Shown here: positions 48,371 to 53,760 of the stretch, in pieces
Layout of the letters: the number at the start of each line of letters is the position of its first letter
How positions within the stretch are numbered: position 1 is the stretch's first letter
NCBI GenBank assembly: GCA_965112155.1
Contig: OZ218105.1
Strand: one strand, 5' to 3'
Length of the DNA: 64,000 nt
Source: Podarcis liolepis
Taxonomy: Eukaryota
The notes under the pieces: generated by a model
Told to the model about the DNA's origin: nothing
The model's input: only the letters and a program-made list of their open reading frames with translations
The model's database searches: none
Translations under genes and position numbers: made by a program

Positions 48371-49455
48371 GCCATTGGTGTGCCTGATTAAGGGATTATA
48401 ATGAAATAATGGGCAAATGTGATGTAATTGTTTCTTGGCAACTTAGTACAGAATTCTCTTCCTAAAATGTTTGTCTCTCTACTCCTCTGTAATGGTAGGT
48501 CGCCTTGTGTGGTATCAAACAGAATCCTCTCTGGAAACATTTAGGGGGGAAATCCCTAAAAAATGGCTCCTTTCCAAGTTCCTCCCTATACAAAGGACTA
48601 TGAATAGCTCCAGTGTATTTTTTAAGAATAGTGAAATAAGGATTGTCTTGGATGGGGGTAGACACAATTAGCATGAAATTAATTGTTAAGGGATTCTGGA
48701 CTCCTAGGAGTTTGAGGACTAGGGTCTAAAAGGCCTATAATCCTTGCCATTCTACACCACCTTATTGCTTTCACCTACCAGCAGTTCTTTCCTTTACGGG
48801 TTGGGGTGGGGAACCTCCAGTCCATGAAACAAAACATGGCACCATCAGGCTTGTCAGTACATTGAGGAAGCGCCACCATCGTACTTCAGGAGTGGTACAT
48901 GTGGGGCTCTCACCTTAGATCCAGCTGATGGGGAGATCTGATCACAACTTCAACATGCATGCCAATTCTTGTTACGTTTAATGAAGAAATTGGGGGGAGG
49001 GGGTTAAATTTAAATCCTTCTGCAGCAGAACTCAGCCCCAGATGCAACAAAACATGTCTCTCCTGTATTGGTCTCTTCAGCCACAGCAGGCGCTATAACT
49101 TTCCAAAAGTTTGACTTCATCCCTGAAGGTGCACTCCTCCATTGTTTGCAGAGGTGAGGGAGATAAGATTCACTACCTCTGCTGTAGAGAAACAATTTCT
49201 AAAACCATCAGGATGTAAACAGGAAAACTCTAATACCTAGATGAATGTTTCCCAAGACCCACTTCCCCTCTGAACTCCGCCTGTTGGTAACTGCGGGTGG
49301 CCAGAGGTCTGTTGCATTCATGTGCAGCTTTCAGGCTTCCCACAGGCACCTCGTTGGCCACTATTGTGCAAGATGCTGGCCAAATCCAGCAGACTCACCT
49401 CATGTATTACCAGAACAAATGAGCAAATGAGATTCCATTTACATGCTTTTGTATC

Positions 49456-49461
49456 TTTATT
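49456..49461 (-). terminator. RPLP1 polyadenylation signal AATAAA
   Basis: AATAAA 23 nt after the stop. Very short 3' UTR, typical of ribosomal protein genes. Confidence 0.85.
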
Positions 49462-49484
49462 AGCAAAGAGTACAAAAAGTTTGC

Positions 49485-49564: not shown

Positions 49565-52500
49565 CTGCAAAATTAATATTGATTAGAATACAGAAATCTA
49601 AGTCCACCTTAATTAATAAACACCCATTAAGCTGTTTTAGCATGCACATTGGATGACTCTCTGTCGCAGCCCCTGTGGAACACCCACCCCAGAAGTGTGT
49701 GACGCCTCCACCGAACAGGTTTTAGATAATGCTGAACTGCTTTGCCCTGCCTTTTGACCCTTGAGGTGTATGCTTTGAGGACCAAACTTGTTAGGTGCAG
49801 ATTACCACCACACAAATTGTGGACAACCTAATTATCCACAAAGTGGAAAAAAGAGACATTTAAAGCATGGCTTGTTAGTCCCTTTTTGGGGAAAACTGCA
49901 TCCCACTTAAATGGATCTAAGGGCCTCCTAAATAAGGAAATAATTTCACTTACCGGGAGCAGCAGCACCAGCAGGAGCCCCTCCACCGGCTGGGGCTGAA
50001 GCCGCTGGAGCACCGCCACCAACTCCTACATTACAGATGAGACTTCCAATGTCAATGTTGGCCAAGGCCTAGTCAGAATAAACAAGTTACTAAAAACACA
50101 AGCATATCAATTTGAGTGACAACCACCCATCGCACAGCACAAACTTAGAACCAGGTACTGCTCTAGAACTGCTAAGAGTTGTAATAGTAAAATCAGCACT
50201 GCCGTCCCCAGAATACATAAATCTGCCAGCCAAGCACCATATGTAGATACTTGGTGTTGGATTTCCATCAGCAAGGCCCTTGGTAAGGTATGATGGGAGT
50301 TGTGATCCAACAGCACCCTAAAGGCAGCAGACTAGAATATATTCTTTCCATAAATGTATTTCTACTAGATGACTTGTTTCTCATTAGTCTTACCTTTGCA
50401 AAAAGTCCAGGCCAGAAAGGTTCAACATTCACTCCGGCTGCTTTGATTAGGGCATTGATTTTGTCCTCCTAAACAAGCAAGTGTTAAGAAAATTATTAAA
50501 GAAATGAGGTAACAGATCATACTCCACCCCTGCCCCAAAATGCATTTATATGCCTCCATCATTAAATCAAAAGGCATTACTAGGTGCATAGCATATGTGA
50601 CATCCCCTATCTGAATAATTTGAAATTAATATCTCAAAATAGTCTGTAGTATCTACCCTCTTGAGTTCACTTCATATGCGTATAAATTCCAAGCAGGCAA
50701 GTGGAAGCCCGCAAGTTCCCAGAAGAGAATGGCAGCCCGTTGCTAGGCTGAACTTAGGTTGGTAATTATTATTTATATATATATATATGTGTGTGTGTGG
50801 GCTAGTAACTGTTGTGGCAAGACAAATAAGGCTGCTTTAGGAATCACCCTGACACTGGTAGGGTTGTTAAAACTACTTTCCTAATTGAGCCGTACCACCC
50901 TGTTGAAGAGAAAGTGGTTTTTTAAAATTATTTTCCCATTTCTACATGCTGAGCTTGGAGAACCTCTGCATACCCTTATACCGCATCGTCCATAGCCAGT
51001 ACTTGCTGCATGTAGCTGACAGGAAGATGTAGTCTGAAACACCTGGAGGGCACCAGGTTGGTGCAGGCTGCCTTAAAAGACAGCATAGGCTGAAGGCCCT
51101 ACACATTACATTTATAGATCCTAAAACGACATTCCTCCCCCCCCCCGCCTTCTGATAGTCTCCTAGCTTTGAGATGGGTAGCTAATTTACCACCCCTTTG
51201 CATGATGTGAAGATCCAACCCGCATCATCCTTAACCATTTGCGATGCTGGCTGGGGTTGATGGGAGCTGGGTGTCCACTGAGGACTGCCCCTAGTCTGCA
51301 GTGTTGTGGGATGAAGCAAAACACAGGATGAAAGCTAAACAGCTATAAGCAGCCAGCATCCTAGGGTCAGAAGAGCCCTCCTGGATGAGGCCAAAGACCC
51401 ATCTAGTCCATCATCCTGTCCTCATGACAGCCAGCCAGGTGCCTGCAGGAACCCGCAGGTGCTCTCTCAACCTGCAACTCCTATCAGTTGGTATTCAGAA
51501 GCATACTACCTCCCCCACAGAGGAATAACACAGCCACTGTGTCTACTAGCCATTGCTAGCCCAGCTTCCCACCAATTTGCCTAATCCCCCTTCTGAAGTC
51601 AGAGCAGTTTGTGGCTGTCACTACATGGGGTGAAGAGGAATCACATAACTGTAGCATTGAAAGGGATCCCAAGGGTCATCATGTGCAGAAATAACCCCCA
51701 ACAGATGGCCTCCAACCTCTGATTAAAAACCAAGGAAGGAGAGTCCACCAGGCGCAGAAACCTCCTACCCCTTTGCTTCTCTTTTCCTACAGAGCCAAAT
51801 GCTCACACTGATTTCTGGCGAGGGCAGCAAATATCCTCAATGTGGCTCCCCCCACGGGGCACATTGTTGGTGACCTTTTCTCACGGAGTTAAATGAAATG
51901 CTCTCCCCAGGGACACCTGCAATTTCAGGCGCCAGGAGAAAACCTTCGTTTTCTTCCTTTTTGTAAATATAAACCATATAATCACATACATTATTTTTCC
52001 CCCTTTCCCTGCCACCAAGCACTTCCCTCAGCTCCTCTCCCCGATGTCTCTTCACATACCTTCTCTACATATTATAAAGTTGTACATACCCTTACATATC
52101 TGTCCATCATGTTATTAACTGATAAATTTGTGTATGCTTATTCAAAACCTGTCAAGGAGTCCAGTTCTTTTTGTTGTCTTGAGAAAACGTTCGTTTTCGA
52201 CCTGCCTTTGCCTAACACCCTAATTTTAATTTTTGGAGGGGCATTGTTTTGACTGTGCACATTGTGATTTTTATCTTGTTTTTTATGCGGTTAATCGGAA
52301 GCCAGCATACGGATAAAATAAGTAAAATTAGCAGAGGGCTTTGCTGGATAAATGATAATAATAATTTATTATTTATACGCCGCCCATCTGGCTGAGTTTC
52401 CCCAGCCACTCTGGGCGGCTCCCAATCAAGTGTTAAAAACAATACAGCATTAAATATTAAAAACTTCCCTGAACAGGGCTGCCTTCAGATGTCTTTTAAA

Positions 52501-53343
52501 GATAGGAATAGCTGCTAATTTCCTTCACATCTGAAGGGAGGGTGTTCCACAGGGTGGGTGCCACTACCGAGAAGGCCCTCTGCCTGGTTCCCTGTAACCT
52601 CCCTTCTCGCAATGAGGGAACCGCCAGAAGGCCCTCAGCGCTGGATCTCAGTGTCCGGGCTGAATGATGGGGGTGGAGATGCTCCTTCAGGTATACTGGA
52701 CCGAGGCTGTTTAGGGCTTTAAAGATCAGCACCAACTGTGCTCAAAAATGTACTGGGAGATCTCTCAGGACTGGTGTTATGTGGTCTCGGTGGCCACTTC
52801 CAGTCACCAGTCTAACTGCCACATTCTGGATTAGTTGCAGTTTCCGGGTCACCTTCAAAGGTAGCCCCACGTAGAGCGCATTGCAGTAGCCCAAGCGGGA
52901 GATAACTAGAGCATACACCACGCTGGCAAGGCAGTCCGCAGGCAGATAGGATCTCAGCCTGCGTACCAGATGGAGCTGATAAACAGCTGCCCTGGATACA
53001 GAATTAACCTGCGCCTCCATGGACAGCATGGCTCCCAGGCTGCGCACCTGGTCCTTCAGGGGCGCAGTTACCCCATTCAGGACCAGGGAATGAGCTTAGG
53101 TCAAGCACGTGGCCAGAAGGGACACTTGAACCAGCGTGGCTGGGCCAGGCCTGCTCTTCCTTCTGCCCCTTTAGCTCCTCTCCCCGAGTGGCCGTTTTCC
53201 CTCCACGTGCCGCGATGTTCCGGCGCATGCGCCCTGAGCCCCTCCGCACGCGGCCTCCCCCTTTCCCTCACCGTGACGGTGACTTCGTCGTCGTGCAGGA
53301 TGAGGGCGGAGTAGATGCAGGCGAGCTCGGAGACGGAGGCCAT
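49485..53343 (-). CDS. RPLP1: 60S acidic ribosomal protein P1, complete 4-exon gene, 113 aa
   Basis: Exons 53343-53272, 50468-50394, 50068-49954 and 49564-49485 splice (GT-AG) to MASVSELACIYSALILHDDEVTVT EDKINALIKAAGVNVEPFWPGLFAK ALANIDIGSLICNVG...EESEESDDDMGFGLFD*. Confidence 0.98.
49954..50068 (-). CDS. RPLP1: RPLP1 exon 3: ALANIDIGSLICNVGVGGGAPAASAPAGGGAPAGAAAP
   Basis: gactag| acceptor, |gtaagt donor on minus strand. Confidence 0.98.
50394..50468 (-). CDS. RPLP1: RPLP1 exon 2: EDKINALIKAAGVNVEPFWPGLFAK
   Basis: gtttag| acceptor, |gtaaga donor on minus strand. Confidence 0.98.
52352..53090 (-). mobile_element. L2-type LINE 3' part inside RPLP1 intron 1
   Basis: SRLGYCNALYVGLP...HITPVL and [15 protein letters not shown] motifs, (TAA/TTA) tail. 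Confidence 0.88.
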
Positions 53344-53760
53344 GGCGGGCAGTCGGGGGTCGATGCGCGGTGCTAGTCGCCGGCTGGGAAATCGGCCTTA
53401 GCTTCTACTGAAGGACACAGCACCTTGCGCGCCTCGCTGAGGGAGCTTGGAGAAAGGGAAGGCCCCTCGCCGCCGACCGAGCTTATAAAGGCTGCCCCAG
53501 CCAATCCCGGCTCGCTCGCGGCGGGGCGCTCTGGCCAATAGCGGAGAGCGTGGCGGACGATGAACCAGTCGCGTTGCGGCGGGGCGGGCTTTAGTCGGCG
53601 GTTGGAGAGGAAGGTCAGATTCGCGCGAGAGCACGAAGACCAATCGTAGCGACGGATACTCCTCGGTTGGCGGCGGCCGCGAGGAGTCGAAGAGGCCAAA
53701 GCCAATCAGAAAGGCGGTTGTTACTTTCTTGCGTTGACGCCGTCTGGGGCCAAGAGGCTC
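53200..53760 (-). promoter_or_regulatory. RPLP1 CpG-island promoter with TCT/5'TOP start
   Basis: Minus-strand CCTTCCCTTTCTCC (53449-53462), TATA-like TATAAG about 25-30 nt upstream (53482-53487), CCAAT boxes at 53501, 53535, 53640 and 53702, GC boxes, NRF1 palindrome GCGCATGCGC 53223-53232 in intron 1. Confidence 0.88.
53272..53343 (-). CDS. RPLP1: RPLP1 exon 1 coding part: MASVSELACIYSALILHDDEVTVT
   Basis: Kozak gccATGG, donor ACG|gtgagg. Confidence 0.98.

What the first reader, a model, noticed from the sequence alone, without database searches (positions are those of the whole stretch)
49440..53760. Intact intron-containing RPLP1 gene sits between PTK2 and AGO2
Seen: a complete 4-exon RPLP1 with canonical splice sites, TCT/TOP start, CCAAT/GC promoter, AATAAA and no lesions, so it is not a retrocopy. 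Established: PTK2 and AGO2 are direct neighbours in human (8q24), while human RPLP1 is at 15q23 beside KIF23. Inference: the whole gene with its promoter and introns was relocated or duplicated by a DNA-level event into the PTK2-AGO2 intergenic space in this lineage, or this is an ancestral position lost elsewhere. It places a very strong ribosomal-protein promoter about 4.5 kb from, and divergent to, the AGO2 promoter.
Basis: partly seen in the sequence, partly recalled or inferred. Interest (0 to 1): 0.78.

Follow-up and report, generated by a model that had tools for sequence, protein, structure and literature searches.

The report
Ordinary RPLP1 gene, normal reptile-bird position
This is an intact, intron-containing gene for ribosomal stalk protein P1 lying between the FAK (PTK2) gene and a probable AGO2 promoter, and chicken is annotated the same way, so it is the usual reptile-bird layout and not a new move in this lizard lineage.

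Summary
A complete 4-exon RPLP1 lies on the minus strand (CDS 53343 to 49485). It has three GT..AG introns (2803, 325 and 389 nt), 342 coding nt, a stop, an AATAAA signal, a CpG-island promoter with CCAAT and GC boxes, and a TATAA followed by a pyrimidine tract. Exons 2-4 hit Pfam Ribosomal_60s collinearly. Each exon matches vertebrate P1 proteins.

The upstream gene is FAK/PTK2. AGO2 is only inferred, from a large CpG island and a 14-codon first exon.

The reading 'relocated in this lineage' is not supported. A chicken paper that took its genes from Ensembl GRCg6a lists '...AGO2, RPLP1, PTK2...' on chromosome 2, 141.6-148.3 Mb (PMC12937304). The layout is therefore shared by a lizard and a bird and is already in public annotation. 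Human RPLP1 sits beside KIF23 at 15q23 (PMC6257893), so a real sauropsid-mammal difference exists, but I could not tell which site is ancestral.

Expression, junction support and synteny in other species are therefore untested. Interest is low.

The parts
53344..53462 (-). Predicted RPLP1 5'UTR. It starts in a 14-nt pyrimidine tract (53462-53449), a candidate TOP start, 25-38 nt downstream of TATAA (53487-53483).
   Evidence: Read by eye.
53463..53760 (-). RPLP1 core promoter: four inverted CCAAT boxes, a GC box and TATAA, inside a CpG island.
   Evidence: Sequence. CpG o/e 0.77-1.14 and GC 0.65.
53272..53343 (-). RPLP1 exon 1 coding part, 24 codons from the ATG.
   Evidence: 24/24 identical to five vertebrate P1 proteins. 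514 of 648 candidates had E <= 0.01.
50469..53271 (-). Intron 1, 2803 nt, GT..AG. It holds an interspersed repeat at 52366-52702 and a (TA)n(TG)n microsatellite near 50775-50800.
   Evidence: splice sites, and local BLAST copies at 25018-25355 and 40684-40975, about 82% identical. for the microsatellite.
50394..50468 (-). RPLP1 exon 2, 25 codons.
   Evidence: PF00428 positions 4-28, 22.7 bits. 25/25 to the two bird models.
50069..50393 (-). Intron 2, 325 nt, GT..AG.
49954..50068 (-). RPLP1 exon 3, 38 codons plus the first base of a split codon (the Ala/Gly/Pro hinge).
   Evidence: PF00428 positions 29-69, 18.5 bits. 34/38 to Naja naja and 33/38 to wombat.
49565..49953 (-). Intron 3, 389 nt, GT..AG.
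49440..49564 (-). RPLP1 exon 4: acidic tail ending in the shared stalk C-terminus, stop TAA at 49487-49485, AATAAA at 49461-49456. The 3' end is approximate.
   Evidence: PF00428 positions 64-88, 28.8 bits, above the 28.1 cut-off.
47214..47522 (+). Last coding exon of PTK2 (FAK), inside this mechanical ORF. It is the end of the FAT domain, with the stop at 47520-47522, and is convergent with RPLP1.
   Evidence: Focal_AT PF03623, E 2.8e-30. Thirteen of 18 PDB matches are FAK1 at 114-130 bits and 5 of 18 are PYK2 at about 86-87 bits.
57500..59250 (+). Large CpG island with a candidate AGO2 exon 1: ATG at 58312, coding to 58354, GT donor at 58355. The AGO2 identity is inferred, not shown.
   Evidence: No Pfam hit. 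The identity rests on my recall of the AGO2 N-terminus and on the chicken gene list.

Best explanation
This is the lizard's regular, functional RPLP1 gene. It encodes ribosomal lateral-stalk protein P1, which with P2 and P0 forms the stalk that recruits translation factors through the shared acidic C-terminal tail. It is a housekeeping gene driven by a CpG-island promoter with CCAAT, GC and TATA elements, and its mRNA probably begins in a pyrimidine tract (a TOP mRNA under growth-dependent translational control). Its place, tail-to-tail with PTK2 and head-to-head at about 4.85 kb with the probable AGO2 promoter, is the orthologous position also annotated in chicken. The position is therefore old, dating at least to the squamate-bird ancestor, and not a recent event. 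Shown here: gene structure, intactness, family, the PTK2 neighbour, and the chicken co-location. Inferred: expression, the TOP start, the AGO2 identity, and single-copy status.
For: Exon translations and splice sites. Collinear PF00428 hits for 3 of 4 exons. In one search, 514 of 648 candidates had E <= 0.01, and the named hits among the 120 listed are P1 proteins. Per-exon identities are 24/24, 24/25, 33/38 and 24/25 to wombat P1, and 24/24, 22/25, 26/38 and 23/25 to Oreochromis aureus P1. Promoter CpG island and motifs. FAK identity of the neighbour. There is no assembly gap between 40684 and 64000; the only N run is at 40532-40683. In one search, 20 of 24 listed runs, from 10 studies and 7 coded organisms, hold all or part of the 4.3-kb stretch including its introns. 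The chicken GRCg6a list reads '...COL22A1, AGO2, RPLP1, PTK2, PTP4A3...' on chromosome 2 (PMC12937304, passages and table text). Tilapia RPLP1 also has 4 exons and 114 aa (PMC7072992, table text).
Against: The chicken evidence is one secondary source. Its list is not in one strict positional order; it reads as two runs, each in the order I recall for human 8q24. So it proves co-location within 6.7 Mb and only suggests direct adjacency. A second RPLP1 copy elsewhere in this genome was not searched for, because no tool here holds this genome. AGO2 is not demonstrated inside the window. Exons 2 and 3 are individually below the Pfam gathering score, and exon 1 has no Pfam hit.
Confidence: 0.8

Rival explanations
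1. Lineage-specific DNA-level relocation or duplication: RPLP1, with promoter and introns, moved into the PTK2-AGO2 spacer within lacertids or squamates.
For: Human RPLP1 is at 15q23 between KIF23 and DRAIC (PMC6257893, abstract and passages), so the lizard site differs from the mammalian one. The gene has introns and a promoter.
Against: Chicken RPLP1 is annotated in the same block, listed between AGO2 and PTK2. A lizard-only event would need an independent, identical insertion in birds.
Confidence: 0.04
2. Old duplicate: this is one of two RPLP1 loci in the genome, with the other beside KIF23. The sauropsid and mammalian layouts then reflect duplication followed by reciprocal loss or retention.
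For: Nothing direct. It would reconcile the two positions without a cut-and-paste move. No genome-wide search could be run here.
Against: The scan's notes for this genome name RPLP1 only in one other note, on this same window. That note base is sparse, so this is weak evidence. Tilapia has a single RPLP1, while the duplicated ribosomal protein genes are listed explicitly (PMC7072992).
Confidence: 0.08
3. Assembly artefact: a contig-level chimera placed RPLP1 between PTK2 and AGO2.
Against: There is no N run between 40684 and 64000. Chicken shows the same gene trio. Several related organisms hold the gene stretch, although that query did not cover the flanks.
Confidence: 0.03

Closest known systems
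Chicken RPLP1 as annotated in Ensembl GRCg6a on chromosome 2
   Same: It lies in the same gene neighbourhood: it is listed between AGO2 and PTK2 within 141.6-148.3 Mb (PMC12937304). Bird P1 models are 24/24, 25/25 and 25/25 identical to window exons 1, 2 and 4.
   Different: I saw only a gene list, not coordinates, strands or distances. Exon 3 is missing or mis-modelled in the two bird protein models I had (11/38 and 10/38).
Human RPLP1 at 15q23
   Same: Same protein family and, by my recall, the same 4-exon plan. The encoded protein is nearly identical in mammals (wombat 105 of 112 compared residues, summed).
   Different: Different neighbourhood: PAQR5-KIF23-RPLP1-DRAIC (PMC6257893), against PTK2 and a probable AGO2 here.
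Processed ribosomal-protein retrocopies
   Same: They carry the same coding sequence family and are common in vertebrate genomes (from general knowledge).
   Different: This locus has three spliceosomal introns, its own CpG-island promoter and no poly(A) tract after the 3' end, so it is not a retrocopy.
Nile tilapia RPLP1 (LOC100692069, LG22)
   Same: 4 exons and 114 aa, against 4 exons and 113 aa here (PMC7072992).
   Different: The tilapia gene is 2095 nt, against about 4.0 kb here. The difference is largely intron 1, which carries an interspersed repeat. The paper text gives no neighbours for tilapia RPLP1.

Membership tests
Ribosomal protein P1 (Pfam Ribosomal_60s, PF00428; P1 subfamily) | Match to the Ribosomal_60s profile along its length | tested here: met
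   Exons 2, 3 and 4 hit profile positions 4-28, 29-69 and 64-88 of 88, in order (22.7, 18.5 and 28.8 bits; cut-off 28.1). Only exon 4 passes the cut-off alone, and exon 1 has no hit. The joined protein was not scanned, by rule.
Ribosomal protein P1 (Pfam Ribosomal_60s, PF00428; P1 subfamily) | Acidic C-terminal tail ending in the conserved stalk peptide shared by P0, P1 and P2 | tested here: met
   The exon 4 translation ends with that peptide. It is 25/25 identical to the snake and bird P1 tails.
Ribosomal protein P1 (Pfam Ribosomal_60s, PF00428; P1 subfamily) | P1-type (not P2-type) N-terminal dimerisation domain | tested here: met
   Exon 1 is 24/24 and exon 2 is 22-25/25 identical to proteins that their sources name P1 or RLA1. 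The short Naja model is the exception at 14/25.
Ribosomal protein P1 (Pfam Ribosomal_60s, PF00428; P1 subfamily) | Expressed and spliced as modelled | not testable with these tools
Processed retrocopy / pseudogene | No introns, a poly(A) tail, disabling lesions | tested here: not met
   There are three GT..AG introns and an open frame of 342 nt, with no frameshift or premature stop.
TOP (terminal oligopyrimidine) mRNA gene | Transcription starts at a C followed by an unbroken run of 4-15 pyrimidines | tested here: inconclusive
   A 14-nt pyrimidine tract at 53462-53449 lies 25-38 nt downstream of TATAA. The start site was not mapped.
Sauropsid PTK2-RPLP1-AGO2 gene order | RPLP1 lies between PTK2 and AGO2 in another sauropsid | tested here: met
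   The chicken GRCg6a/Ensembl gene list on GGA2 (PMC12937304) shows co-location, and the list order suggests adjacency.

The most novel reading that the evidence does not exclude
RPLP1 changed neighbourhood once in amniote history as a whole gene, with introns and promoter. The move was between the 8q24-like PTK2-AGO2 spacer (lizard, chicken) and the 15q23-like KIF23 site (mammals), with the PTK2-AGO2 site ancestral and the mammalian site derived. No paper found in my searches discusses this.
Probability: 0.35. Interest if true: 0.25.

Novelty: already known. Interest (0 to 1): 0.1.

Why it matters
It matters little. The gene is a standard housekeeping gene, and its position matches what public annotation already shows for chicken. 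The one mildly interesting point is that sauropsids and mammals keep an intron-containing ribosomal-protein gene in different neighbourhoods. That implies an old DNA-level relocation, or a duplication followed by loss, and any genome browser could date it in minutes. For annotation of this window, the result fixes the convergent PTK2 and RPLP1 3' ends, with about 1.9 kb between the PTK2 stop and the RPLP1 poly(A) signal. It also puts about 4.85 kb between the RPLP1 start and the probable AGO2 ATG.

Tried and rejected
Reads. There is therefore no test of splice junctions, expression or assembly continuity.

Synteny through contigs. 

Literature for further species. Of the ten searches, only (confirmed again) found a positional list with RPLP1 beside AGO2 and PTK2, and it was always the same chicken paper. 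One search, using the old name EIF2C2, found 1 paper, which was irrelevant. (KIF23 with PAQR5 or TLE3) found 2 and 3 papers, all human. One search was badly designed: it returned 2,924 papers driven by the taxon words, and none of the 25 listed held RPLP1. led to the tilapia paper, which gives a linkage group but no neighbours. PMC9596773 does not mention Ptk2, so the direct AGO2-PTK2 adjacency in mammals is stated from my recall only.

The scan's notes hold nothing on KIF23, TLE3 or argonaute and have no second RPLP1 note outside this window.

Rfam found 0 families in 48400-64000, so there is no recognised intronic snoRNA. Pfam found nothing at E <= 0.01 in 9 of 9 ORFs taken from the RPLP1-AGO2 spacer, intron 1 and the AGO2 intron, so no passenger gene fragment hints at an origin.

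I considered matching 'longest contig' lengths of FAK and RPLP1 proteins of the same species to infer linkage. I rejected it because 90% clustering would hide the species of interest, and the cost of two large searches was not justified.

I did not ask for any supplementary files. The chicken paper's supplement may hold per-gene coordinates that would settle adjacency.
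Full report
What is there. On the minus strand of 49.4-53.8 kb there is a complete gene for ribosomal stalk protein P1. I translated each exon on its own. Exon 1 (53343-53272) gives 24 codons from the ATG. Exon 2 (50468-50394) gives 25 codons. Exon 3 (50068-49954) gives 38 codons plus the first base of a split codon. Exon 4, from 49564, gives the acidic tail and a TAA stop at 49487-49485. All 3 of 3 introns begin with GT and end with AG after a pyrimidine-rich stretch, and they measure 2803, 325 and 389 nt. 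The exon lengths add up to 342 nt, that is 113 codons plus the stop. An AATAAA lies 24 nt after the stop, at 49461-49456.

Family. In Pfam, 3 of 4 exons hit Ribosomal_60s (PF00428) at successive profile positions 4-28, 29-69 and 64-88, with 22.7, 18.5 and 28.8 bits. Only exon 4 exceeds the 28.1-bit cut-off by itself, and exon 1 has no hit. To reach full-length relatives without joining, I queried the unmodified window ORF that starts at the ATG and reads on into intron 1 (80 aa). Of 648 candidates, 514 had E <= 0.01, and the named ones among the 120 listed are P1 proteins of fishes, birds, reptiles and mammals. Aligned exon by exon, the window peptides are 24/24, 24/25, 33/38 and 24/25 identical to wombat P1. 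They are 24/24, 22/25, 26/38 and 23/25 identical to Oreochromis aureus P1, and 24/24, 14/25, 34/38 and 25/25 to the Naja naja model, which lacks part of exon 2. To the two bird models they are 24/24, 25/25 and 25/25 for exons 1, 2 and 4; those models lack or mis-model exon 3 (11/38 and 10/38). The targets are hit in collinear order. The gene is therefore intact and conserved.

Promoter. The 5' end sits in a CpG island: the windows 53001-53500 and 53251-53750 have GC 0.65 and CpG o/e 0.77 and 1.14. On the gene strand I read four inverted CCAAT motifs, one GC box, a TATAA at 53487-53483 and, 25-38 nt further on, a 14-nt pyrimidine tract at 53462-53449. This is the layout expected for a TOP-type ribosomal protein gene, but the start was not mapped. 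Rfam finds no RNA family in 48400-64000. Intron 1 owes part of its length to an interspersed repeat at 52366-52702, which has about 82% identical copies at 25018-25355 and 40684-40975.

Neighbours. The ORF 47214-47519 on the plus strand is the end of a focal-adhesion-targeting domain (PF03623, E 2.8e-30). Against solved structures, 13 of 18 matched sequences are FAK1 at 114-130 bits and 5 of 18 are PYK2 at about 86-87 bits. The upstream gene is therefore PTK2, convergent with RPLP1, with about 1.9 kb between the PTK2 stop and the RPLP1 poly(A) signal. Downstream, a large CpG island at about 57.5-59.25 kb holds an ATG at 58312 followed by 14 codons, one more base and a GTGAGT donor at 58355. 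I recall that vertebrate AGO2 begins with a similar short first exon, but no tool here confirms it: Pfam gave no hit, and the later exons lie outside the window. AGO2 is thus inferred. None of 9 ORFs taken from the spacer, intron 1 and the AGO2 intron has a Pfam hit at E <= 0.01.

Is it an artefact? The only N run in the window is 40532-40683, so PTK2's last exons, RPLP1 and the AGO2 island lie on uninterrupted sequence. Of 24 listed sequencing runs, 20 hold all or part of the 4.3-kb gene stretch. They come from 10 studies and 7 coded organisms, and 2 runs hold at least half of the sampled words. None is on record as RNA. That query covered the gene only, not its flanks.

Interpretation. A full-text search for RPLP1, AGO2 and PTK2 together returned 4 papers. 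One of them, a 2026 chicken runs-of-homozygosity study (PMC12937304), states that its genes were taken from Ensembl on GRCg6a. Its table lists, for chromosome 2 at 141,620,636-148,345,259, '...ST3GAL1, COL22A1, AGO2, RPLP1, PTK2, PTP4A3, ARC...'. I read these passages and the table text. The list is not in one strict order. It reads as two runs, each in the order I recall for human 8q24, and RPLP1 stands between AGO2 and PTK2 in the first run. This proves that chicken RPLP1 lies in the 8q24-like block with AGO2 and PTK2, and it suggests direct adjacency. Combined with the lizard window, the simplest reading is one shared, old arrangement. For human, a case report lists PAQR5, KIF23, RPLP1 and DRAIC inside a 676-kb 15q23 gain (PMC6257893, abstract and passages), so the sauropsid-mammal difference is real. 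That AGO2 and PTK2 are direct neighbours in human I state from recall; PMC9596773 does not mention Ptk2.

Which site is ancestral. The tilapia ribosomal-protein paper gives RPLP1 as LG22, 4 exons and 114 aa, but no neighbours (PMC7072992). No paper in those searches discusses the position of RPLP1 as such.

Verdict. The gene is ordinary. Its position is the one already annotated in chicken, so it is not a lizard novelty. What remains is a small evolutionary footnote: a whole-gene change of neighbourhood between sauropsids and mammals, with the direction unknown. Any genome browser can resolve it.

Noticed in passing
window 54001-54750: A second, smaller CpG-rich patch lies between the RPLP1 promoter and the AGO2 island (GC 0.51-0.58, CpG o/e 0.80-0.95). 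The ORFs there have no Pfam hit. It is the subject of another note on this window (s1-846532).
   Followed up: partly
window 58120-58165: A purine-rich GAG/GAA repeat run, followed by an A/T-rich patch, lies about 150 nt upstream of the candidate AGO2 ATG, inside the CpG island.
   Followed up: no
window 40532-40683 and 40684-40975: The only assembly gap in the window (152 N) directly abuts a copy of the interspersed repeat that also sits in RPLP1 intron 1 (52385-52679, about 81% identical).
   Followed up: no
window 56424-56942 and 59660-60235: Two plus-strand ORFs share a similar repeat-derived peptide segment, seen by eye. This suggests two fragments of one retroelement family flanking the AGO2 island. 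Neither has a Pfam hit at E <= 0.01.
   Followed up: partly
window 60501-61000: An isolated CpG-rich window (GC 0.56, o/e 0.73) lies in what would be AGO2 intron 1.
   Followed up: no
window 50775-50800: A (TA)n(TG)n microsatellite lies in RPLP1 intron 1.
   Followed up: no
proteins P0029, P0105, P0053: The public gene models of RPLP1 in Nesospiza, Patagioenas and Naja naja are incomplete or mis-spliced: exon 3, or part of exon 2, is missing or replaced. The window's gene shows the full structure.
   Followed up: partly
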